A program made the translations under genes and the position numbers. This document shows, piece by piece, positions 4,301-46,901 of a stretch of 64,000 nt of DNA (its first letter is position 1; each line of letters begins with the position of its first letter). Below the pieces are notes generated by a model. That model made no database searches. It saw only the letters and a program-made list of their open reading frames with translations, and was not told the origin of the DNA. The stretch comes from Selaginella moellendorffii (Eukaryota > Plantae > Lycopodiophyta). The stretch covers positions 1,347,923 to 1,411,922 of the forward strand of contig NW_003314295.1 in the NCBI RefSeq assembly GCF_000143415.4, read 5' to 3'.

Positions 4301-4718
4301 GAAATACCTGTATACTTGTTCTTAGATCTAGCAAACACAACAAACTTTGAGATGGGGTTATACACAGCATAACACTCACTAAAATAGGTGAGAAAGTGAC
4401 TTTAAAATATGGAATACTTTATGACTCTTTTAAATATTAGGACTCCAACAATGACAACCGACTCACTAATAGATGCTGAAAGAAAAGTGTAAATATTGAA
4501 TAACCAAAAGAAAAAAAGAACCATGTAAGTGCTCTCGTCCCCATCATAGAAAGGGCAACCTTTGCAAAGTCCTGTTTTGGTTTGTTTGCCTATACTTCTA
4601 AGGGTGGTAAAGTCATTGCAGAGTATAATCGACTGGATGTAGTAGAGATCAATGCACACATTTGCAGGGAAGCAAGTGGGAGCAAGCTCATCATGCATGA
4701 TCATGTCCTTGGCTAGCT

Positions 4719-6020
4719 TCAGCTGGAAAGCTGGAATCCCCACCCTGTCATATGCACCATCACCAAGTCCCATGCCCCAGAGTGATCCCCCTCGCTCCAC
4801 AACCAGGTGGTGAGTGATATCATGCTGCTGCTCTCCAAGTCTGCAGTCCCAAAGCTCATTGTGTCCCTTAGTACAATCCTCACACCACTACTGTTGCTGC
4901 CACTGTTGCTGCTAGCACCACCAGTGCTCTTCACTCTCTCAAACAAGAGTGCTAGAAGCTGTCCCCTCCCCACATACTCTTTGAAGCCCAGGTAGAATCG
5001 GATCCCTTGACCGAAGTTGCCATCAGCCGAGGTGGCAAGGAACTGGTCCGTGTCGGCCACAAGCTCAGGTAGGGTGTGCAACTTGGCAACACTCAACACT
5101 CCCTGTGGCCAATCATGCCCGACCAACATCCTTCCCATCTTCATGTTCGGTGGGAGCTCTAGGGGAGTGACCACCTTGATAAAGTGAGGAGAAAAACGAG
5201 TAGAGGTGCCACTTGCATTCATCCTCACCATGGCTCCAACATCCAGTAGGAATAGTGCGCATGCTAGGGTATGATCTAGGCAAATGAAACCATCTTTCTC
5301 AACACCCATGGCCTCGACACACATCATCTTGGAGTTGTCAAGCACCAAGTACACTCGCTTCATAGCCATTGTCTTCAAAGCCCTTGGCAGACACATTCCT
5401 GAAAAGAACAAGCTTCCTCTCATTGAATTAGACGTAATCTAGAGCATTTGCCTCTATTGGTGAGAGATCGGTCTTTGATTTGAGAGCTGATAGCACCCTC
5501 TTTTTTCTTGATACCACTAACCTACCTACTTGTGAAAGTTAATGTGATTGTTCATACAAGATGTGAAGTGTATAAGATCAGCCATCAACTCAAAGGCCAA
5601 TCTCTCACCAGCAGAGGTAGATGCTCTAGATTATGTCCAGTTCAATGAGAGGAACCTTGTTCTTTTCAGGAATGTGTCTGCCAAGAGCTTTGAAGACAGT
5701 GGCTATTTCTCAGGACTCAAGCAGGAGTATCTAGTGCTTGACAACTCCAAGATGATGTGCATTGAGGCCATGGGTGTCGAGAGATATGGTTTTGTTTGTC
5801 TAGATCATACCCTAGCACTGCGCCATTCCTACTGGATGTTGGAGGCACAGTGAGGATGAATGCGGGTGGCACCTCTGCTCATTTTTGCTTTTTCAAGGTG
5901 GTTGCTCTCCTAGAGCTCCCAACGAACTTGAAGATGGGAAGGACCTTGGCTGGGCATGACTGGCCGCAGGGAGTGTTGAGCATTGCCAAGTTGCACACCC
6001 TACCTGAGCTTATGGCCAAG
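4719..6020. repeat. Inverted duplication of an unknown coding sequence (arms ~5053-5490 and ~5576-6018, spacer ~85 bp)
   Basis: The minus-strand ORF 4719-5423 and the plus-strand ORFs 5548-5853/5796-6047 encode the same peptide (YLVLDNSKMMC.EAMGVE..GF.CLDHTLA...GHDWPQGVLS.AKLHTLPEL). Both copies are frameshifted. Confidence 0.85.
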
Positions 6021-6029
6021 ACATTGATC

Positions 6030-33179: not shown

Positions 33180-36100
33180 TACTAGTGTAAACACAATTAA
33201 AATGCTAAACCATGGTTAGAGAAAGTTTAAAAGTGACCATTAGATTGAGGATCAACCTGGTTCTTCAAAATGGAATACGTAAAAATTAATCAACTTTTTT
33301 CAACCCTTTGGGCAATAAAATATTAATACTGTGAGGTGCCATACACTCACAATGCTAATATCATAAAATATAATAAATTTTAGCTTCTAAGAATAAAATT
33401 AAAAGTGATTATTAGTTATAAATTTTTATACCTTTACTTAAAAAGGTTAAGATAACTTTTTCTATTTCTATTTTCTTACATTTACATGTAAAGCAAGGAG
33501 ATCCCTATTGTTTTAGAGATTCTCAAGATTAACATGGACAAACCAATTTAAATTTAAATTTGGAGAAAGCACAAGCTTGTGTACCTACTTTATGTTAGGA
33601 CAAAATATAACTAACTTCTCATTTGGCCCTTTCCTAAATAAACTCACTTCCTTGGAAGCCTCACTTGACAATAGTATCTAGAATTGTTTCACCTCTTTTA
33701 TATCAATTTTGTTTTGTTAGCATTTATTGTCCCAAAGACTCCCAACATCATCAACTTAGAAAATCTTATTCAAAAAATTTCATAAAGTTGAACTCTTAGA
33801 AAGAACATAAATTTGTATACTTATTATGTCTCAACACTAAATATGATTTGCTCTCTCATTCACCTTTTCTTACATATAACTATAAACAATTATAATCTTT
33901 TACAAATTGCTTAACTATATCAATTTCCACAGTAATGCTATTACAACTCCCTTTTTTTATAGTCAATACTTAAAATAATGATTTTGTATTAAAATTAGAT
34001 AATAAAATTCAGAGCTTTATTCGAAAAAGACTTTATAATGCTCGGTTTTCATACAAAAATACATTTGTTACACTAAATTTTAAACAACAAAATACAAAAA
34101 TGGAAACAAATATCATAACTATAGAACCCCATGTATTTGTTTTTAGGAGAAAATATCTTTGTATAATAAATTTTTTGGATGTAATACTGAACACTAAAGC
34201 TAAAACAAATAGTTCTAAAAGGGTTTAAATCAAAAGATAAAAATTCATGACTACACAAACAAACATACAAGAAAATACATAAATTATCAACAAACTTTAT
34301 AAGCATTTTGGTACTTTCTTAAGGTTTTTTAATCACATGGGAAAATAGAAAAAATAAACTTTGAGAAGGTCAATATGGTATTAAATATTGCAGCTATATA
34401 AAGTAAAAATTTTCATTTAAAAATTACTCTATAATGTTTATTTTTTATTTAAAAAATGCATTGTTTAAATTAAATCTCAAATAATAAAATATAAAAGTGT
34501 GAGAAAATATCACAACTATAGAACCTTTTATTTGTTTTTCAAAAGGACATAGCTTTGTATAATAAATGTTTTAAATGCGATTGAAACCTAAAATAAATGG
34601 TGGTTAATACATTTTTTGGAAGGCTTCAAATTAAGGGTAAAAGTTTATGATTATACAAAAAACCTTACAAAAAATTACATATAGTATCAACAAATTTCAT
34701 TAGGATTTTGTCAATTTCTTTAGCTTTTATAATCATATAGAAAAAAGGGAAGAAAATTTGAAGAAGGTCAATATGTTCTTAAATAGTGTAACTATTGAGT
34801 TTGAAAAGACAAAAAAATCTAAGATATTAAGCAAAAGTTTTAACAATAAATCTTTAAAATCAAATCTTTCTGTATTCAAAATATTCATGTCATAGTTATT
34901 TATAAGTATCATTTGAGTTATAAAGTTAAAAGTTTCATTAAAAGTTATTTTAGGTATGATAATAAGATTTTTGTTTAATCATTATATAAATTTAAAGAGC
35001 CATTCTCCAAAAATAGCTTTTTCTCAATTCATTTTCAATGTTAAACTTTTATTTAAAAGGATTTTCTGTTTCATTTTTTTATTTGACTAAATATCTGAAA
35101 ACAAAGATGAATTTTATTTTGCAACAAAATAAAATAACTTAAGAAAATTAAATATTTAAATAAGAAACTTCACATTTTTTAATTATTTTTTAATTTGTTT
35201 TTATACTATTTTAGGAAATGCTGCAAAAATATTAATACTTTAAAAATGGTAATTTTCCATCAGCAATGTATTGTATAAGGTTTCATTGTTATACTATAAT
35301 TGGAATCATGCTTATAAATAAGCATCATATAAAAATTTAATCAAATTTTAGATTTTGCTACTAGTATTATTAAGGTTTCTACATTTCTTTATTTGACCAA
35401 ATATATAGAAAAATAAAGAATTTCATCATGCAAAAATATTTTTAAAAATTAATAATTTAAATATTTTATTCTTCAGAGTGTTCTTCAGATTTGTTCACGA
35501 CCTTGCATAAGACACTAATACTTTATAAATGATAGTTTTTTATAGTTAATTGCTTGTATAAGATTTCATTGTTACATTATAGTTAGATTTATACTTATAA
35601 ATAAGTATCATATAAATATTGAAATTAAATTTTAATATTTTCTACTAGTAGTAACACTTTTAACCACTTATTTTAATCATTGTACATGTTTATAAAACTT
35701 TTATCCACAATGGCTTTTAGTTTTTTCAATCCAATTTCAATATTAGAATTTTATTTAAAATGTTTTTTACTACAATTGTTTTTTTTACCAAACATTTTTA
35801 AAAATTATATTGTAATGCATAAATAGGAAAGAAAATTTTAGAAATATAAGTTCCTTTAATACTATTTTTGTACCTATCACAAAAACACTTTTTATTTTGT
35901 TAATGACAATTTTAAATTCACTTGTGAAACTTTTGTTATTATCTTCCAAGAAAAATTTAACATTTTGTATGAATTACAATTTCATAGAGTAGTTTGTCAT
36001 TAAAGATTAATCATTGCTAGTGGCTTGAGAGCGTAAAAATTTATCATTACAGTATAGTTTGAATCATATTTATAAATAACTATTAAATGAACATTTTTAA

Positions 36101-38325: not shown

Positions 38326-41180
38326 ATGTCCAGTGTCCCCACGCCTGCATCCGGATCGACACTTTCCAACCGACAATTCAGCGAAGACGCTCAATCTCAT
38401 GGCACAGCCAAATTGCCAGCAGCAGCGGCGGCGGGAGCTTCGTGCCCGGAGCACGAAACTTCCAAAATCCGCGCGCTCAATCCACTGGCCAGAGAGTTTG
38501 TCCCTGGTATGTCACTCCTTTTATTTCGAACGAGTAGAAATTTTCTAATTTCCTTGTGATTGTGATTTTACACATTGTAGTTGAGGAGGGATCTCCTTCT
38601 TCGCGGTCTCCGACCAAGCGAACATCGGTAAGCATGGTGATGCTCATTTCCCAAACACCGAGTTTTTTTTTTCCCTTTTCTAGAGTCGTGAAGAATTTCC
38701 TTCAGCACCAAGGAACTTCTCAGTAAGTGTTCAAGTTTTTTTTTCCCATAAAGCGAGGATTTGATGTGATTGCGTTTGACATGAGCAGGATCACGACGCC
38801 GCAGCTACAAGCTCCGAGTCAAATAGTGGGGTGAAGGAAAATTGGGTGGAAAGTGGCATGCCCCACAAACAGTCACAAAAGCTGCAAGAAGTAACAGGAG
38901 GACTCTCAGCCGCTCTTAAAGTCCCTCAAGCAGGAAAAAGTTCTCTCAAGATGGGACACGAATTTACTTCTTCTCAGCACTCAACCCAGCCATCATCTTC
39001 ACGACGCGGACAGACATGGAACGCGAATCATCTACTTAACTTTCACTACGATCCCATCGTTCGACCGTCCCCAAGGCCTCCTCAGCGCAGGCAGCATCAG
39101 AAAGTTCAGGCTTACGACAAAGAGCTCTTCTTGCAAGCAAACTTTCGGTTCTTGGTCTCGGATTTTGGGGACTATTTGGAGAACAGCACTGACCCAGACA
39201 AGATGCTCGAGTGGGAAGACATAGCCCTTGTGGAACTCTCGTCCTCGGTGGCTATCCAGTGTCCGATATGCTTGGAAAGTCCACCTCTGTGCCCACAGAT
39301 CACGTCGTGCGGTCACGTCTTTTGCTTCCCATGCATTCTACGATACTTCTCCGACGCGGACCACAAGACTCACGTAAAGAAATGCCCGCTCTGCTTCGGC
39401 ATGACTTCTCCTAAGGAGCTGCGCACCGTCTACATTCACAACGTGAAGGAACACAGGCTAGGTGACAATGTTGGCTTTACGCTCTTGACGCGGGATAAAG
39501 GGTCTGTTATACCGTTCAAAAGAAATGAGTCGAGGGGATCACCGGCTTACACCAAGGATGGACGTTGCCATCTGTACTCCAAGTTTACACTGACATGCGA
39601 CGTCGAGATGACAACAAACAATGCCGTTTCGGAGCTCACAGCATGGGCTGAGAGAGCTCAGTCGGGCGATGACGAAGACATCGAACAGCTGCCTTTTGTG
39701 TTTGCGGCAATCGATGAGCTTAAGTCGAGAAAGGCTGCTTGGGACGAGCACCGGACGTTGGAGTTTATCTCGAGCAGCCCATCTGTAAGGCAGAGAATTA
39801 TGGCTCAGGTGAAGGCTGGAATCACAAAGCTGCCTGGAGAAGACTTCGAAAGTTCTAGCTCAGCTGGAAAACACCATGAAAAGCAGGAAGTGTTGGAACC
39901 GTCGCCGCCGAAGCAAGAAAGCGTTTATCACATCAATCCGTTCACTGATGAACGAGAGTTGGTTGATGTAGACAAGAAGCCAAAATCGAAAGATTTGCAT
40001 CAAGAGGACGCACCAGAGGACTGGGAATCCATCACTTCACCTGTGAAGACCGCGACTCATAAGGACGCCAAAGACGCCAAACACGAAGAGACTGATTCTT
40101 ACAGCTTTTATCAGGTTCGTTGTATCATTGCGGGGTTTTACTGACGTGTTCTCTTGCAGGCCGCAGATGGTCAACTCGTCATTTTACATCCTTTGACAAT
40201 GAAATGCTTGGTTCACCACTATGGATCGTACACGTCTTTGCCTTCGAGGTAATTTCTCTTGCATGTTTTTCTATTCTGATTGCATACGATGTTCCAGAGT
40301 TGAAGGGAAAATACTTGAGATGGAAGCAATGATTCAAACCGAGCTGTTGAGAAAACGATACCGCTATTTGAGTCATCTACCACTTACTAGCACCTTTCAG
40401 GTAATTTGGATATTTCAAAGTTACAACAACAGATTATTCTGATTCTTAAACCAGCTGTGCGAGGTGGACCTCTCAAAAATCTTACCAAGCTCGTCACTGT
40501 CTCCCTTCAAGGATGAGCTACATGCTCGAGAGGTTCGCAGACAGAGACGCCTGAAACAGGTACAAGATTGGTTTCTCCTAGGCAGAATTGTCGAGCGAAA
40601 TTTGCATTCAGGAGAAGATGCTTAAATCTGCTGGGCAAAGACTTGAAGAGAAAGTGGTGCCACCATCTCCAGCAGACTACATCGCGATCATGAACGCCCT
40701 TCACGAAGACGAAGTTCCAAACGACAGTGAGTTTGTCGGTAAGTCTCAAGTAGAAATGCTCACACTCGAAACTCACCCGCTGGATTCTTCAGCCCCTTCT
40801 ACAGCACCAGTCCCGGCCTCGTCTCCACCAGTCGACGAGAGGAGACTCTTCTCGAGGGTGGCCAAGCTCGGCTTTGCTTCTGGACACGATGCTCCGGATC
40901 TCACGAACGACGGTCTCTCCTCTAACAGGCCACCGATCCAACAACAGTCGCCATGGAACCAAAAACAAGCTCCGGCTGGAAGCAGCAGCGGTGAGTGTGT
41001 TCCAATTCCTGCTCTGTTTCCTAATCTTCCAGCGCGAACACTCTTGCAGGAGGAGCTTCCCTTTCTTTCGCGGACGCCATACAGAGAAAAGTGGAGAAGA
41101 AAACTCCGGAGGCTCCCTCGCGTGGAGCAGCCCGCAAAGGCAAAGTTTTGCTTTCTACTGGCAGTGGAAGAAAGTACTGA
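38326..41180 (+). CDS. RNF10: RNF10/Mag2-like C3HC4 RING E3 ligase with N-terminal PAM2-like motif, multi-exon
   Basis: NANHLLNFHYDPI, KELFLQANFRFLV..DPDKMLEWEDI, CPICLESP.CPQITSCGHVFCFPCI, YSFYQ|AADGQ..LHPL.MKCL, RKRYRYLSHLP and the C-terminus KVLLSTGSGRKY*. Confidence 0.88.
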
Positions 41181-41235
41181 ATAGTCAATGCGTTAATATA
41201 AATACAAAGGGTCAACGGTGTTTATGGTTTTATTC

Positions 41236-41500
41236 TCGAATATGCCTTTAGAGATATTTGTGCTGAAAGATCAGCTTTCTTGGTTGCTCCAGGACCCGGA
41301 GTTCAGACAGTGCACTCCTCAAGAGCTTGCATCCCGACTTCAACTACAGGTATAACAAAAACAAACTGTTTTCTAAACTGAAATCAGTGACACTCTCTAA
41401 ACTGCCAACAATGTAGGCGTTTCATTAAAAGTTTCAGACCTCTGAGAACGATGGTGACGGGGACATCTATCCTCAAGCAGCCCCAGATGGTTTATTACAA
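41236..41500 (+). pseudogene. Decayed fragment of the downstream subtilase (including intron sequence), fused to a copy of sequence upstream of the 42 kb gene
   Basis: 41320-41500 matches ~46238-46470 (agcttgcatcc.gact..actacaggta..ctctctaaac..ccaacaa.gtaggcgtttc..tcagacctc.gagaacgatg..atcctcaagcagc). 41236-41270 resembles 41926-41960. Confidence 0.75.
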
Positions 41501-41639
41501 CAGTTCATAGTCTTCATGGCCACATATAAAACATCTACTAAGCATATAATACTTTTGAAGCAAATAGCTCAATGCTAGTATGGAGGAACTACTTGAACCG
41601 CCAATTCTTGCATCCTGACCCACTGTCACAGGTTTCACC

Positions 41640-41859
41640 TTCTCCAACCTTGCTCTAGCAATGGGTATCATGGGAAGGCTTGGCTTGAGAACACGCTTCC
41701 ACGCCTCTTCCCAGCTTCCTTGCCCTTGAGCTTCATGCCGGCTATGTTTTCTCGCCTTTACGTTGTCCCAATGAACATCAGATGGTTGGTCTAATAGAGC
41801 CCTAATGGCATTGACTCACCTTCCAAGAACCTGATTTCAAAATCAACAACACTGCTCAT
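41640..41859 (-). pseudogene. Second remnant of the SDVH.DNVKARKH family
   Basis: The minus strand reads PSDVHWDNVKARKHSRHEAQGQGSWEEAWKRVLKPS, with an ATG at 41859 downstream of a TAGGGTTT telo-box. Confidence 0.45.
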
Positions 41860-42013
41860 TTGTTCTCCGTGCAAAACCCTAAAGTGATAGCCCTAATAGT
41901 TAAAATATCTGTTAACTGTTCTTCCCGAATATGCCTTTGAATATATGTGTGTGGCTAAAATATCTAAAGAACCCTAGAGCGACGATGATAATGTGAAAGA
42001 CCGGCAAGGGCAA

Positions 42014-43750
42014 ATGCTGATGGCGCAGGTAGTGAGCTTGCAGGCGCCAGTGCCGGGGATTCGCGCAGCGGCGGCGCTGGACAAGGATGCGCTATCCAAG
42101 CAGCAGCAGCAGCAATGCGCGACCAATTTCTCGTCGCCAGGTTTGCGCTGTTCTTCCACTCAGCTCGGGCAGGGCCGGGATTCGGCCGTGTGTAGGGCTA
42201 GGATAGGCAGGACATGGCCGAATCCCAACTACAAGCCACCAGAGGGCGATGGATGGAACACCGGATCGACTGGAAGCTCGCTACCGTGGAATGAGGGCGG
42301 GGGAGGCGCTGCCCAGGCGGATTCTCAGTGGAACAACCAAAATGCCGCCGGAGGCAATGGGCAGCAGCAGAGTAGCGGCTGGAACAGCAATCCGCAAGGC
42401 TCTTGGAACAATCAAAATTCTGCGTGGAACAACCCGGCTCCTGGAAATCAGAGTTCCTGGAGCAATCCACCGGGCCAGCAGCAGGGTTCTAGTTGGAACA
42501 GCGGTGCTGGCTCGCAGCAAACTTGGAACGCTGGGAATCAAGGTCAGAACACTGGTTGGAACAACCACGATTGGAATAAAAACTCGTCGGGTGGTGGTTC
42601 TTCGTCTTCGTGGAGCAGCGCTGCCAATGCAGTGATCGATGTCACAAACAGCACTACTCCTGCTGCTCCCGCTCCTCCGGCTCCTCCCGCCGCTAACACT
42701 ACCACTGGAACGGGATGGAACAACCAGTTTGGAGGCAGTGCTTCCCCGAGCTTCAACTCTTCCGTAGCAACGAGTCCTGCTTCTACGACTGCTCAAAGTC
42801 CGATTCCAACGGGAAGTACTGCTCCAAGTTCACTCTGGGATACTACGCCGGCATCCGATGCTCCAAAGCTAGGTGGTGCTACCACCGTCACTGGCGATGC
42901 CACCACCACTTCCACTCCGACCGAGTCTCCAGCGATCGGGGGCCTCGCTCCTCAGAAGCTTTACCGCGACGAAGACGGCTGGCCCAGTCCGTTGCTGGAT
43001 CCCGAGTACAAGCCCTCGGACGAGAGCTTTTCGTCCGGGTCTTTTCGAAGCTCATCTTTCGGGAAAGGTGTCGGGAAGACATGGCCGAACCCAAACTACA
43101 AGCCGCAGCCTGGTGACAACTACGTCTACTCGTCTGGCGGCTCTTCGTTTAGCAAATACGGCAGCGGGAAGACGTGGCCAAATCCAAACTACAAGCCGGA
43201 GATGAGTGATGGTCGTGACAACTTCGTGTCCTTCAGCAAAGGAAGTGGCAAGACATGGCCGAACCCGAACTACAAGCCGCAGCCTGGCGATCCTCCGTTC
43301 GTTAGTGGCTCCGGCAAAGGTGGCACTGGAAAGACTTGGCCGAATCCAAACTACAAGGGTGATGATCCGACTTATGTCTGGGGTGGTGGTGGCAAAGGCA
43401 GCGGGAAGACATGGCCGAATCCAAACTACAAGGGTCCTCCCCCGATTTACGTGACGGGAGGAGGCAAAGGTGGAGGAAAAGTTTGGCCGAATCCAGACTA
43501 CAAGGGTCCTCCTGTCGGCCCCGAGTTCGCAGGATCCACGAAGAAAGGAGGGAAGACATGGCCGAATCCGAATTACAAGGGAGACGATCCAACGTACGTA
43601 AGGGGTGGCAAAGGCAGTGGCAAGACATACCCGAACCCAAACGTGAAGCCACTTCCAGGAGAAAACCCATGGAATGCGTAAGTTCATCTGTTTCCTTTTC
43701 TCTTTCTTTCCTCTTGTGACCTGACGTGTTTGCTTTGCAGGCGGTGGTGA
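42014..43750 (+). CDS. Uncharacterised low-complexity repeat protein: predicted plastid transit peptide, W-N/Q/G/S-rich region, 9 x (K/R)TWPNPNYK-type motifs
   Basis: Uninterrupted ~555-codon ORF with ATG at 42014 or 42020. The N-terminus MAQVVSLQAP...RCSS...VCRA is transit-peptide-like. The repeats vary synonymously at DNA level while the amino acids are conserved. A likely intron at 43678-43740 gives the C-terminus PWNARW*. Confidence 0.85.
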
Positions 43751-44063
43751 ATGTTAAGTGACTCAACGAGTAATTCTCATCTTTCTTTTTGTATCAGCAT
43801 CGCACCATGTAGGTACGCATCTGAAGTTAGTCTTGGAACTGTATGGCCTTTAGTTCTATCTGAATATCATTTGCTGTTTCTTATCCCGAGTTCTATTGTT
43901 GGTGTTTCTTATCCACTTTAAAACGAAGGCGCTCGTACCTTGGTCTAAACTGACTAGTGGTGCCGAGTAAATCGTGGAAAAAATGTCGAGCGAGATTCCT
44001 GTAAGCCTTTTGTTTCTCAGGTTGGCTTGAAATTCTTCCGCGTGACCCGTTGCTTCTTTGTCC

Positions 44064-46901
44064 ATGGCCAGCTTTCGAACAGTAGCATTTTTCTTTGTTT
44101 TGCACTTCGCAGCATTCATCGATGCAACATCAAAGGTGTAACTCTTTGCTGAATTTGTTTTTTGGTTCGTGTGTGCTTTATATACTTGTTTTCCACAGTC
44201 ATATATTGTTTATCTGGGAGGGCCTTTAGAAGAGGGATACAATGTCGCTTATCTTCACCACCAAAAACTATCTACAGTTCTTGGGTACAAGTTACACTTC
44301 TTTCTTTACAAAATGAACTTACTTTCAGAACCAGACACGAGCTTGCCAAGGAGGCAATGCTATATAGCTACAAGCACCTCTTCAATGGATTCTCAGCAGT
44401 TATCCCACCTGACAAGGTTAAGAACATTTCAAGTATGTCTCGAAGACTTTATTATTGCAAGTAATAACGTAGTTTGAGTTGTTTTGCAGAGCTGCCTGGC
44501 GTTAAGATGGTCCTGGAGGACAAAGTGTATAGACTCCAGACGACGAATTCGTGGCAGTTTCTCGGTCTCCAAAATATGAATGGAACCGTTGCAAATGGAA
44601 AGATCCAGCAAACTAGAAATAACGGCGGCCAAGATGTTGTGATTGGTATGCTTGACACAGGTACGAATACCGTGTGATTGCTGTCCTTAAGACGACTTTT
44701 CTTGTGAATGCTTCAGGCATTTGGCCAGAATCGGCAAGCTTCGATGATAGCTCTTACAGTCCGGTCCCAGAAAACTGGAATGGTTCTTGCGTAAACACCA
44801 CGGATTTTAGTTCCACAAGCGACTGCAACCGGTGAGCTTTTTCAACACGCCATTTGTGAATGCCAACAGCATGTTATATCACACAGGAAAATAATCGGTG
44901 CCCGATATTACTTTCAAGCCGCAAATGCGACGCAACAAGACGAGTCAATCCTGCTATCGCCAAGAGACACCGAAGGCCACGGCACGCACACGGCATCCAC
45001 CGCAGCCGGAAGTTTTGTCAGGGATGCAAACTACCGCGGTTTTACTCGCGGAACTGCTCGAGGTGGCGCGTATGGAGCTCGGCTCTCGATTTACAAGACG
45101 TGCTGGAACAATTTGTGCTCGAATGCTGACATTCTGGCAGCGCTTGACGACGGTATCGGGGACGGTGTGCAAGTTTTCAGCATCTCACTGAGCGGTGAAG
45201 GAGCTATCCCTGAGACAAAGGATCCACTGGCCTTTGGAACGCTCTATGCGGCCATGCATGGGATTTCCATCGTTGCAGCGGCGGGAAACTATGGTCCTAA
45301 GTATGCCACCGTAAGCAATGTAGCACCCTGGATGATTACCGTTGCTGCTACCACAACTGATCGGGCCTTCGCCAGCAACGTCATCCTCGGCGACCTCTCG
45401 AGCTTCATGGTAAGGAAAACGTTATTTTTTACAGGAGCTTAATTGCTTACTTCCAGGGTGAAAGTTTATCAGAAGCTGCCCTGCAATCTGGATTCTATCC
45501 CCTCGTCGCGGCTTCCGATGTTTCCTTTGCGAACATCTCAAGGTAACTATCCGCTTGTTACACTTTGCAGAAGTTACTGTAACTTTGCTGTGATTGAAAC
45601 AGTGACTTGAGCATGATGTGTATTCCTGGAGCACTCGACCCTCAAAAATCGCAGGGTAAGATCGTCTTGTGTTCAGACAGTGGTGTTTCTTTAGTTGTGA
45701 AAGGAGTGGCTGGTGCACTTGCAAAGGCTGCGGGTTTGATCATTTACAACAGCGAAATGCAAGGCGAGACTTTAGAGGCCGTGAATTATGGCCTGCCTGC
45801 AGCAAACGTTGGATACAAAGCTGGACAGGCTATTGTTGCTTACATGCAATCGACTGGGTAATTTCTCTCTATGCAATTTTTTGTGGTTTTAAGTTTGTCA
45901 TATGATCATATTATTATCCTGTTGTTTTTTACAGGAATCCAACGGCATATATAACTCGTTCTGTGACATCAACTAGTGGTAGACCCGCTCCGGAAGTTGC
46001 TGCATTCTCTGGTCGAGGTCCAAACTTGGTTTCTCCAGAGATTGTCAAGGTACTTGGAAGCAGTTTACTCTGGAACTTTCAGCTAAAACTTCTTTCTTGG
46101 TGATGTAGCCTGATATTGCTGCTCCAGGAGTAAGCATACTAGCCGCGTACAGCGAATTTCACAAAACAGACAGTTATGTGGTCATTTCCGGAACTTCCAT
46201 GTCCTGTCCACACGTCACGGGAATTGTAGCGCTTCTCAAAAGCTTGCATCCGGACTGGAGCCCAGCAGCAATTCAATCAGCTATCATCACTACAGGTAGA
46301 ACACAAAGAATCTGTTTTCTATGTTCAAATCACTGACGCTCTCTAAACAGGCAAGACTACCAACAACGTAGGCGTTTCGATAAAGGATCAGACCTCCGAG
46401 AACGATGCGACGCCTTTTGACATCGGTGGCGGGGAGATCGATCCTCAAGCAGCAGCAGACCCGGGACTTGTTTACGATGCCACTCCTGGAGACTACTTTC
46501 TATTCTACTGCCAAAAACTCAAGCTCCAGAAAGCGCCGGCCTTGGACGCGGATTGCAGAGACACCGAAACCGAGTCGTTTCAGCTCAACTATCCGTCCAT
46601 CTCGGTGTCTCTCAAGCCTGGCACGGCTGCAAAGATCACCCGCAGGCTAAAGTCCGTGATGGAAGGAACTTCTACGTTTCACGCCAGTGTCCGTCTTCCT
46701 ACAGTGGCCTCGCTGACCGTCTCGGTGAGGCCCTCGGTCCTAAACTTCACCCAGCAAGGCGACGAAGCATCGTATAAGATGGAGTTCTCATTGGTGGAAG
46801 GATTTTCCACAAAGCAAGCTTATGTCTATGGCTCCTTGACGTGGAGCGATGATCGAGGCTACCGAGTACGCAGTCCCATGGTCATCAAGCTGGAAGCATA
46901 A
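44064..46901 (+). CDS. Subtilisin-like serine protease (S8A) with signal peptide, I9 propeptide, PA and Fn3-like domains
   Basis: [21 protein letters not shown]|[37 protein letters not shown] (Asp), [12 protein letters not shown] (His), [18 protein letters not shown] (Ser), QLNYPSI and [12 protein letters not shown]. Confidence 0.95.

What the first reader, a model, noticed from the sequence alone, without database searches (positions are those of the whole stretch)
42014..43750. Unannotated plastid-targeted multivalent disordered protein with nine KTWPNPNYK motifs: candidate condensate/scaffold linker
Seen: an intact ORF in four parts. (i) A transit-peptide-like N-terminus ends ..VCRA, so one motif (RTWPNPNYKP) would sit at the mature N-terminus. 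(ii) A G/S/N/Q-rich segment carries ~13 regularly spaced Trp (GWN, SWN, QWN, AWN, TWN; ~42254-42725). (iii) A P/T/S spacer follows. (iv) Eight further (K)(T/V)(W/Y)PNP(N/D)(Y/V)K motifs are separated by G/S/K linkers (~43073-43650), plus a degenerate GWPSPLLDPEYKP. The motif is conserved while codons vary synonymously, implying selection on the peptide. Established: sticker-spacer proteins with repeated aromatic motifs in chloroplasts include the Rubisco linkers EPYC1 (Chlamydomonas) and PYCO1 (Phaeodactylum). Inference: this may be an undescribed multivalent scaffold that condenses a plastid enzyme, membrane or starch/nucleoid component in a vascular plant not known to have pyrenoids. I do not recognise it as any named family.
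Basis: partly seen in the sequence, partly recalled or inferred. Interest (0 to 1): 0.88.

Follow-up and report, generated by a model that had tools for sequence, protein, structure and literature searches.

The report
Expressed orphan repeat-motif disordered protein
A strongly transcribed but unannotated gene, most likely of the spikemoss Selaginella, encodes a floppy 557-residue protein with nine copies of the peptide KTWPNPNYK and a block of thirteen Trp-Asn stickers; it looks like a multivalent scaffold, but its partner and its location in the cell are still unknown.

Summary
An ATG at 42014 opens a reading frame that runs to 43677. A 63-nt GT..AG intron is spliced out in three of the four RNA runs laid, and the stop codon ends at 43750, giving 557 aa. 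Assembler word depth exceeds that of both neighbouring genes in all four RNA runs from four studies. The protein has an organelle-presequence-like N-terminus, 13 Trp in a G/S/N/Q block (11 followed by Asn), a Pro/Thr/Ser spacer, and 8 tandem KTWPNPNYK motifs plus one N-terminal and one degenerate copy.

Selection on the peptide is supported. Motif identity is 88%, against 19% just after each motif, and third codon positions vary 3.5 times more than first and second positions. Allelic SNPs give pN/pS of about 0.21, with 0 nonsynonymous and 7 synonymous changes after residue 300.

AlphaFold2 finds no fold. Pfam, PDB, and 5.8-billion and 1.84-billion protein libraries return only one relative: a decayed paralogue mis-modelled as Selaginella moellendorffii SELMODRAFT_424337.

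The multivalent sticker-spacer scaffold reading is plausible, and the architecture parallels diatom PYCO1. Plastid targeting, condensation and any partner remain untested. An Argonaute-hook reading of the Trp block is a serious rival. The gene is real and is a new sequence family; its function is inferred only.

The parts
41874..41881 (+). telo-box AAACCCTA about 100 nt upstream of the transcript start; possible promoter element
   Evidence: 3 copies in the window, no more than chance in number. By my reading of the coordinates, each lies just upstream of a gene.
41983..42013 (+). short 5' leader; contains a mini-uORF ATGATAATGTGA (41985-41996). A TATA-like TAAAATAT lies at 41956-41963.
   Evidence: RNA contigs start at 41983, 41984 and 42001. 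The contig starting at 42001 is preceded by adaptor sequence. Depth upstream is about 0-5. Sequence read.
42014..43677 (+). exon 1 coding sequence (aa 1-554 plus 2 nt of codon 555)
42014..42199 (+). aa 1-62, organelle-presequence-like N-terminus (MLMAQVVSLQAPVPGI... ...GRDSAVCRA): first 16 residues uncharged, 16% Ala, 15% Ser+Thr, net charge +3, Arg-rich end; no signal-peptide hydrophobic core
   Evidence: maximum 11-residue Kyte-Doolittle hydropathy is 1.42. An allelic in-frame 3-nt deletion lies in the CAG/Gln run at 42099.
42209..42235 (+). motif copy 1, RTWPNPNYK (aa 66-74), close to the putative mature N-terminus
42254..42718 (+). Trp-Asn block, aa 81-235: 13 Trp in a G/S/N/Q-rich, slightly acidic segment (aa 63-240, pI 4.9); 11 WN, 2 WS; 4 GW, 0 WG
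   Evidence: Most allelic nonsynonymous changes fall here, but none hits a Trp.
42614..42973 (+). Pro/Thr/Ser/Ala-rich spacer (aa about 201-320)
42977..43015 (+). degenerate motif GWPSPLLDPEYKP (aa 322-334)
43076..43654 (+). eight tandem units, period 23-31 aa, of form KG(S/G)GK-T-W-P-N-P-N-Y-K-(P/G)-x(2-8)-(Y/F)(V/A)-Gly/Ser/Lys linker; the C-terminal segment aa 321-557 is basic (pI 9.6)
   Evidence: After aa 300 there are 0 nonsynonymous and 7 synonymous allelic SNPs. AlphaFold2 gives pLDDT of about 41, with only 2-4-residue strands scattered through the repeat units.
43678..43740 (+). intron, 63 nt, GT..AG
   Evidence: joint 43677 to 43741 in runs X3, X9 and X11
43741..43750 (+). exon 2 coding end: completes Ala555, then Arg, Trp, stop
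43751..43807 (+). minimal 3' UTR. Contigs of X3 and X11 end at about 43807. In X9 a contig runs on into the downstream gene.

Best explanation
This is a real two-exon nuclear gene, most likely of Selaginella moellendorffii. It encodes a well-transcribed, lineage-restricted, intrinsically disordered 557-aa protein that probably acts as a multivalent sticker-and-spacer scaffold.

Shown: transcription and splicing, lack of any predicted fold, the motif count, and purifying selection on the motif block.

Inferred mechanism:
- After import into an organelle (most likely the plastid) the presequence is removed.
- The basic C-terminal block presents eight closely spaced KTWPNPNYK short linear motifs, and a ninth sits at the mature N-terminus. 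Each motif is followed by a small (Y/F)V element. Each would dock weakly, through its Trp/Tyr and Lys, onto a folded and probably oligomeric or lattice-like partner.
- The slightly acidic Trp-Asn prion-like block would supply self-association and cation-pi contacts with the Lys-rich block.
- Together these could cross-link the partner into an assembly or condensate.

The partner is unknown, and Rubisco is only one candidate. My confidence that the gene, its disorder and its motif multivalency are real is about 0.9. My confidence in plastid location is about 0.5. The figure given below is for the scaffold mechanism as a whole.
For: - Transcription: assembler word depth is 400, 100, 185 and 33 across the CDS in four runs from four studies, against 13-180 for the upstream gene and 0-85 for the downstream gene. 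The tool warns that depth is a poor measure of expression and that runs found with this gene favour it.
- The intron is spliced in 3 runs.
- Both alleles are present at about 1:1 in the four polymorphisms seen in all four runs.
- Nine strong motifs plus one degenerate copy.
- Motif identity is 88% against 19% in the residues just after the motif, and codon position 3 diverges 3.5 times more than positions 1 and 2.
- Allelic pN/pS is about 0.21. All 9 nonsynonymous SNPs lie in aa 121-255, none hits a Trp, and after aa 300 the count is 0 nonsynonymous to 7 synonymous. My estimate of the chance of 7 of 7 being synonymous, from the site counts, is about 4e-5.
- AlphaFold2 mean pLDDT is 36.7 for the full protein and 41.3 for the C-terminal block, with no helices and only 2-4-residue strands.
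- Mature pI is 9.24, and the two blocks carry opposite charge.
- The N-terminus has no signal-peptide core but has transit-peptide-like composition.
- PYCO1 shows that a transit peptide, a prion-like domain and short Trp and Tyr stickers (KWSPR, GTGYNP) can make a working plastid condensate scaffold, and that one Trp per motif is critical (PMC10288592).
- Nearest language-model neighbours of the C-terminal block are tandem disordered binding repeats (staphylocoagulase, FnBPA, EspF). Scores are below 0.6, so this is a lead only.
Against: - There is no localisation, interaction or phase-separation data.
- No transit-peptide predictor could be run. The putative presequence has Asp23, Asp25 and Asp56, and Ser+Thr is only 15%.
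- Single-sequence AlphaFold2 is a weak test of disorder.
- Motif spacing of 23-31 aa is much shorter than in EPYC1 or CsLinker (about 50 aa), which suits binding adjacent sites on one lattice rather than bridging large particles.
- No orthologue outside this genome could be examined, so the age of the family is unknown.
- The SNP test rests on 22 sites taken from assembled contigs.
- Only the contigs of four runs were laid, so expression level is approximate and tissue is unknown.
Confidence: 0.45

Rival explanations
1. It is a cytosolic or nuclear GW-type 'Ago-hook' scaffold. On this reading the N-terminus is not cleaved. The 13 exposed Trp in the G/S/N/Q block insert into the Trp pockets of Argonaute PIWI domains, as in GW182, NRPE1 and SPT5L. 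The KTWPNPNYK block recruits an effector.
For: Plant WG/GW Argonaute-binding domains are defined only by exposed Trp next to small residues plus a composition richest in W and G, then N, S, A and D, and poor in L, I, M, Y and C (PMC2910046). Residues 75-240 fit this composition, with Trp spaced at a median of 11 residues. The block is disordered.
Against: Only 4 of the 13 Trp are GW and none is WG. The conserved dipeptide is WN, which is not the defining pair. The N-terminus looks like an organelle presequence. The authors of the composition method themselves report many false positives among Gly/Ser-rich repeats (PMC2910046). Allelic nonsynonymous changes concentrate in this block, whereas the constrained part is the C-terminal motif array.
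Confidence: 0.15
2. It is a lattice- or polymer-binding repeat protein rather than a condensate former. The tightly spaced, basic, Gly/Lys-rich 24-31-aa units would lie along a periodic acidic surface, with one motif per subunit. Candidates are nucleic acid or the nucleoid, a cytoskeletal or division filament, a glucan, or a membrane protein array. Tau, nebulin or FnBPA repeats work this way.
For: The period is short and fairly constant, and the C-terminal block is basic (pI 9.6). Language-model neighbours are tandem repeats that bind along a partner. The full-length query's neighbours include a PTAC12-like nucleoid protein at score 0.56, which is a weak lead.
Against: Nothing identifies the polymer. 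The neighbour scores are in the range that shuffled proteins also reach. The Trp-Asn prion-like block is not explained by this reading.
Confidence: 0.15
3. It is a secreted structural cell-wall protein of the proline-rich or arabinogalactan type. The ..YK-ending Pro-rich decapeptides would resemble PPVYK-type repeats, and the AP/SP/TP-rich spacer would be glycosylated.
For: The motif ends in Tyr-Lys and is Pro-rich. The middle segment is rich in Ala-Pro, Ser-Pro and Thr-Pro dipeptides. The resemblance to PRP repeats is from my own knowledge and was not tested.
Against: There is no signal peptide: maximum 11-residue hydropathy is 1.42, and the N-terminal stretch is interrupted by Gln, Ser, Pro, Gly and Arg. 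RNA contigs show no upstream exon that could add one.
Confidence: 0.05
4. It is a young orphan gene whose product has no specific molecular function. On this reading it is a transcribed repeat expansion that is tolerated and drifting.
For: No homologue exists outside one decayed paralogue. The sequence is low-complexity. The family shows gene death: L001 7387-8112 carries an in-frame stop, large deletions and only one motif.
Against: Depth is higher than that of both neighbours in every run laid. The motif is conserved while spacers and synonymous sites have diverged. pN/pS is about 0.21, with 0 nonsynonymous and 7 synonymous changes in the motif half. The 1.67-kb frame is intact in both alleles, and the only indel seen is in-frame.
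Confidence: 0.1

Closest known systems
PYCO1 (Phaeodactylum tricornutum Rubisco linker; PMC10288592)
   Same: Similar size (the published PYCO1 fragments run to residue 592, against 557 aa here). Both have an N-terminal targeting peptide, are mostly disordered and hydrophilic, and are basic (pI 10.03 against 9.3). Both have a prion-like region. Both carry two kinds of short aromatic sticker containing Lys-(x)-Trp-(x)-Pro and Tyr-Asn-Pro-like elements: KWSPR and GTGYNP in PYCO1, KTWPNPNYK here.
   Different: There is no sequence homology. PYCO1 repeats are about 80 aa, against 23-31 aa here. PYCO1 has no separate 13-Trp WN block. PYCO1 comes from a pyrenoid-bearing diatom and is specific for form ID Rubisco, whereas this organism is a vascular plant with no documented pyrenoid. 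No localisation or binding data exist for this protein.
EPYC1 (Chlamydomonas) and CsLinker (Chlorella) Rubisco linkers (PMC13655443)
   Same: Disordered, basic, repeated stickers separated by spacers. They are lineage-restricted, and sequence is not conserved between linkers.
   Different: Their stickers are short alpha-helices spaced about 50 residues apart. Here the motif is Pro-rich and non-helical (no helix), and spacing is half that or less.
WG/GW Argonaute-binding ('Ago hook') domains of NRPE1, SPT5L and GW182 (PMC2910046)
   Same: A disordered block with many exposed Trp in a G/S/N-rich context. Only the Trp and the composition are conserved, and binding is multivalent.
   Different: The conserved dipeptide here is WN, not GW or WG (4 GW, 0 WG). 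The protein has an organelle-presequence-like N-terminus. It also carries a second, better-conserved motif array that Ago-hook proteins lack.
Tandem disordered binding repeats of bacterial adhesins and effectors (staphylocoagulase, FnBPA, EspF)
   Same: These are the nearest language-model neighbours of the C-terminal block. Each consists of short tandem units that each bind a folded host protein.
   Different: Scores are 0.49-0.58, which is within the noise range. There is no homology, and the organisms and setting are unrelated. This is an analogy only.
SELMODRAFT_424337 (Selaginella moellendorffii hypothetical protein, P0001)
   Same: It is the only sequence relative found. It shares the presequence fragment, part of the Trp block and one KTWPNPNYK unit.
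   Different: It lies at a non-syntenic locus (GL377631.1). The homologous DNA has an in-frame stop and large deletions. The database model is a chimera: parts of it are read in frames other than the one that is open in the window gene, and it is fused to an upstream repeat element. It is a pseudogene, not a functional twin.

Membership tests
Pyrenoid Rubisco linker class (EPYC1 / CsLinker / PYCO1; a functional class, not a homology family) | Mostly disordered protein with repeated sticker motifs | tested here: met
   pLDDT 36.7 and 41.3 with no stable secondary structure; 9 strong motif copies plus 1 degenerate copy
Pyrenoid Rubisco linker class (EPYC1 / CsLinker / PYCO1; a functional class, not a homology family) | Positively charged (high pI) | tested here: met
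   pI 9.24 for the mature protein and 9.6 for the motif block; PYCO1 is 10.03 (PMC10288592)
Pyrenoid Rubisco linker class (EPYC1 / CsLinker / PYCO1; a functional class, not a homology family) | Chloroplast stroma or pyrenoid localisation | tested here: inconclusive
   The N-terminus has transit-peptide-like composition and no signal peptide. No predictor or experiment was available.
Pyrenoid Rubisco linker class (EPYC1 / CsLinker / PYCO1; a functional class, not a homology family) | Sticker spacing long enough to bridge Rubisco holoenzymes (about 48-80 residues in known linkers) | tested here: not met
   Trp-to-Trp spacing is 23-31 residues, against about 50 for EPYC1 and CsLinker and about 80 for PYCO1 (PMC13655443, PMC10288592)
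Pyrenoid Rubisco linker class (EPYC1 / CsLinker / PYCO1; a functional class, not a homology family) | Host organism forms a pyrenoid or Rubisco condensate | tested here: not met
   The literature states that hornworts are the only land plants known to assemble pyrenoids (PMC13655443). A search for Selaginella plus pyrenoid returned 55 papers; none of the 15 listed is, by title or abstract, about a Selaginella pyrenoid.
Pyrenoid Rubisco linker class (EPYC1 / CsLinker / PYCO1; a functional class, not a homology family) | Binds Rubisco and phase-separates with it | not testable with these tools
   Needs biochemistry
WG/GW Argonaute-binding proteins | Multiple GW or WG dipeptides in a disordered domain rich in G, W, N, S, A and D and poor in L, I, M, Y and C | tested here: inconclusive
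   The composition fits (PMC2910046). However, only 4 of 13 Trp are GW and none is WG; 11 of 13 are WN.
WG/GW Argonaute-binding proteins | Nucleo-cytoplasmic protein that binds AGO | not testable with these tools
   The presequence-like N-terminus argues against this, but it was not tested.
Plant cell-wall proline-rich / arabinogalactan proteins | Cleavable N-terminal signal peptide | tested here: not met
   Maximum 11-residue hydropathy is 1.42 and there is no uninterrupted hydrophobic core. RNA shows no upstream exon.
Any Pfam / PDB / sequence family | Significant sequence similarity | tested here: not met
   Pfam: 0 hits at E<=1. PDB: 0 hits at E<=10. The 5.8-billion and 1.84-billion protein libraries return only the pseudogene-derived P0001. 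The back-translated motif is absent from the metagenome and prokaryote genome collections and from the full text of 8.4 million papers.

The most novel reading that the evidence does not exclude
The protein is a native stromal linker of a vascular plant. Its KTWPNPNYK stickers would bind form IB Rubisco, or another abundant stromal enzyme complex, and condense it inside the chloroplasts of Selaginella. That would be a pyrenoid-like or other enzyme condensate in a tracheophyte, with a linker already compatible with plant-type Rubisco.
Probability: 0.07. Interest if true: 0.9.

Novelty: new variant of a known kind. Interest (0 to 1): 0.5.

Why it matters
Well-transcribed, lineage-specific disordered proteins with many copies of one short motif are rare and usually mark a scaffold with a specific partner. 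The pyrenoid linkers EPYC1, CsLinker and PYCO1 were each recognised partly from this kind of architecture.

This protein is absent from the searched annotation of a model lycophyte genome, so screens that rely on annotated proteomes, such as linker-finding pipelines, expression atlases and proteomics databases, would probably miss it. If it is stromal and binds a plant-type enzyme complex, it would be a natural sticker system from a vascular plant. That is directly relevant to efforts to build Rubisco condensates in crops. If instead the Trp block is an Ago hook, it would be an unusual RNA-silencing scaffold.

In either case the nine-fold motif gives a clean experimental handle, through peptide pull-down and W-to-A controls. 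At a minimum, the gene model should be added, and the chimeric model SELMODRAFT_424337 should be flagged as a pseudogene.

Tried and rejected
- Pfam scan: no family.
- Tandem Repeats Finder: no DNA-level array for the motif repeats.
- Word-indexed homology search, with the whole protein and with the C-terminal region at E<=10: only P0001.
- Exhaustive phmmer against 1.84 billion representatives: only P0001.
- PDB sequence search at E<=10: nothing.
- Full-text search for the motif strings: 0 papers.
- Back-translated motif scans of metagenome contigs, as a two-motif pattern and as a single 9-mer, and of 185,579 prokaryote genomes: 0 hits.
- ESM Atlas feature search: scores of 0.61 or below. The full-length query's neighbours lean towards plastid or green-algal proteins, and the C-terminal block's neighbours are tandem binding repeats. 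Neither is usable as evidence.
- AlphaFold2 on the full protein and on the C-terminal block alone: no confident structure, so no fold search was run.
- The idea that P0001 is the other haplotype or a functional paralogue: rejected. The locus is non-syntenic, carries a stop and deletions, and retains one motif.
- A minus-strand gene: rejected. The 211-aa minus-strand ORF at 43052-43687 is a by-product of the repeat, and the intron is GT..AG on the plus strand.
- Signal-peptide or cell-wall reading: rejected on hydropathy.
- Earlier notes of this scan, searched by place, by words and by sequence: nothing bearing on this locus.
- Selaginella plus pyrenoid literature search: none of the papers listed was relevant.

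I could not examine other Selaginella or lycophyte transcriptomes.
Full report

Yes. The ORF list shows a single long plus-strand frame, 41993-43681. Its first ATG is at 42014.

Contigs of four public RNA runs from four different studies were laid on 40500-45500, with these results:
- Coverage starts at 41983-42001. One contig carries adaptor sequence immediately before 42001.
- Assembler word depth across the whole frame is about 400, 100, 185 and 33. The upstream gene shows 13-180 and the downstream gene 0-85.
- A 63-nt GT..AG intron (43678-43740) is removed in three of the runs.

Splicing replaces the in-frame TAA at 43679 with Ala-Arg-Trp-stop, ending at 43750. The product is 557 aa. The GT..AG orientation fixes transcription to the plus strand. 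The long minus-strand ORF at 43052-43687 is a by-product of the repeats.

The same four polymorphic positions (42441-42506) appear at about 1:1 depth in all four runs. I read this as one heterozygous clone used by several laboratories. The only sequence relative is a Selaginella moellendorffii entry, and introns here are 47-63 nt. Together these point to S. moellendorffii or a very close relative.

**2. Anatomy**

- **aa 1-62.** The N-terminus has an uncharged first 16 residues, 16% Ala, 15% Ser+Thr and 15% Gln, net charge +3 and an Arg-rich end (..GRDSAVCRARIGR). The best 11-residue hydropathy is 1.42, so there is no signal-peptide core. By classical rules (my own knowledge) this resembles a stromal transit peptide, although Asp23, Asp25 and Asp56 are atypical.
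- **aa 66-74.** RTWPNPNYK.
- **aa 81-235.** Thirteen Trp lie in a G/S/N/Q-rich, slightly acidic segment. Eleven are followed by Asn although Asn is 17% of the block; I estimate the chance of that at below 1e-6. Spacing has a median of 11 residues.
- **aa about 201-320.** A Pro/Thr/Ser/Ala spacer.
- **aa 322-334.** The degenerate GWPSPLLDPEYKP.
- **aa 355-547.** Eight units of period 23-31 aa, of the form KG(S/G)GK-TWPNPNYK-(P/G)-x(2-8)-(Y/F)(V/A)-Gly/Ser/Lys. This block is basic.

Values: pI 4.9 for aa 63-240, 9.6 for aa 321-557 and 9.24 for the mature protein.

**3. More than chance, and under selection?**

Across the nine strong copies, motif amino-acid identity is 88%, while the 14 residues after the motif are 19% identical. 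Nucleotide differences are 0.30 per site at third codon positions and 0.086 at first and second positions. Five motif columns use several synonymous codons. Tandem Repeats Finder detects no DNA array. The copies are therefore old, and the peptide is what is being kept.

Independent support comes from the alleles. There are 22 SNPs visible in RNA contigs inside the CDS: 13 synonymous and 9 nonsynonymous, giving pN/pS of about 0.21. All nine nonsynonymous changes lie in aa 121-255 and none removes a Trp. After aa 300 there are 7 synonymous and 0 nonsynonymous changes. The only indel seen is an in-frame loss of one CAG in the Gln run.

**4. Fold and family**

AlphaFold2 without an alignment gives mean pLDDT 36.7 for the 555-aa exon-1 product. 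For the C-terminal 216 aa alone it gives 41.3. There are no helices, and only 2-4-residue strands scattered through the repeat units. This is consistent with disorder, but single-sequence prediction is a weak test.

Sequence searches found almost nothing:
- Pfam: no hit.
- PDB: no hit at E<=10.
- The 5.8-billion-protein word search, with the full length and with the C-terminal region at E<=10, and the exhaustive phmmer run over 1.84 billion representatives: only P0001, SELMODRAFT_424337.

P0001 maps to GL377631.1, with different neighbouring genes. The homologous DNA there is 67-94% identical in patches, with large deletions. It contains an in-frame stop and keeps one motif. The database model changes frame relative to the window gene and is fused to an unrelated upstream repeat that also occurs at window 4612-6026. 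It is a pseudogene. The window's own product is absent from the libraries, so 'unannotated' is correct for what was searched.

The back-translated 9-mer is absent from 241 million metagenome records and 185,579 prokaryote genomes. The motif strings occur in none of about 8.4 million full-text papers.

**5. What it most likely does**

The architecture consists of a targeting peptide, a prion-like aromatic block, and a basic array of short aromatic Pro-rich motifs. That is the architecture of a multivalent scaffold.

The closest worked example is diatom PYCO1:
- It has a transit peptide, a prion-like domain and pI 10.03.
- Its repeated KWSPR motif binds the Rubisco small subunit through a critical Trp.
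- Its GTGYNP motif contributes a Tyr to self-association (PMC10288592, PMC13655443).

KTWPNPNYK combines similar elements (Lys-x-Trp-Pro and Asn-Pro-Asn-Tyr) in one unit. The oppositely charged Trp block and Lys block could also associate with each other.

My preferred reading, at 0.45, is this. The C-terminal motifs dock weakly and multivalently on a folded, oligomeric or lattice-like partner. The Trp-Asn block adds self-association. The site is probably the plastid (about 0.5).

The steps shown are transcription, splicing, motif multiplicity, constraint and lack of a predicted fold. The steps inferred are import, cleavage, partner binding and assembly or condensation.

**6. Against the specific Rubisco-linker idea**

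- Motif spacing is 23-31 aa, against about 50-80 aa in known linkers.
- Hornworts are the only land plants reported to form pyrenoids (PMC13655443).
- Nothing links the motif to Rubisco.

I put this reading at about 0.07.

**7. Rivals**

- **(a) Ago-hook scaffold (0.15).** Plant WG/GW domains are recognised only by exposed Trp plus a W, G > N, S, A, D composition (PMC2910046), which the Trp block matches. However, it has 4 GW, 0 WG and 11 WN. It sits behind a presequence-like N-terminus and is the less constrained half of the protein.
- **(b) Repeat protein binding along a polymer or lattice (0.15).** Candidates are the nucleoid or RNA, a filament, a glucan or a membrane array. The short period and basic charge favour this, but there is no specific evidence.
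- **(c) Cell-wall PRP/AGP-like protein (0.05).** Rejected because there is no signal peptide and no upstream exon.
- **(d) Functionless young orphan (0.10).** Contradicted by expression and constraint.

**8. Novelty and verdict**

The gene is real, and its sequence family is new: there are no relatives beyond a dead paralogue. Its architecture is a new variant of the known sticker-spacer scaffold kind.

I set interest at 0.5. The gene is a clean, testable candidate with a good experimental handle, but every functional statement is still inference.

Noticed in passing
L001:6001-8268 (S. moellendorffii GL377631.1) and window 4612-6026: The database protein SELMODRAFT_424337 is a chimeric model. 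Its N-terminal half derives from a repeat element that also occurs as an inverted pair at window 4612-5425 and 5643-5975 (about 70% identity). Its C-terminal half reads a decayed, stop-containing copy of the gene studied here, partly in different frames.
   Followed up: partly
window 41985-41996: A four-codon mini-uORF (ATG ATA ATG TGA) lies in the 5' leader if transcription starts at 41983-41984, as two RNA contigs suggest. A third contig starts at 42001, which would exclude it.
   Followed up: no
window 31936, 38247, 41874: By my reading of the coordinates, all three AAACCCTA telo-boxes of the window lie just upstream of gene starts. Their number is no more than chance (36 of 100 shuffles reach 3), but their placement is promoter-proximal.
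   Followed up: partly
window 38831-41211 (+): The upstream neighbour is a spliced RING-finger gene with the motif CPICLE..CGHVFCFPCI. Introns at 40557-40608, 40738-40791 and 40990-41048 are confirmed by RNA contigs.
   Followed up: partly
window 43741-44832 (+): In run X9 one RNA contig continues from the 3' end of this gene through 43807-44657 into the downstream gene. That gene looks subtilase-like from motifs recognised by eye (signal peptide, an inhibitor-I9-like segment, DTG). The other runs end near 43807. This may be read-through, an overlapping UTR or an assembly join.
   Followed up: no
window 42099-42114: The CAG(5) run encoding Gln30-34 in the putative presequence is length-polymorphic. 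One run shows an in-frame 3-nt deletion.
   Followed up: no
window 41593-41866: A low-depth (3x) RNA contig in run X1 only covers the promoter region with 7 mismatches in 274 nt. It probably comes from a paralogous or repeat copy elsewhere in the genome.
   Followed up: no
window 34001-36000: A very AT-rich stretch (GC 0.205) lies between gene-dense segments with GC of about 0.5. It was not examined.
   Followed up: no
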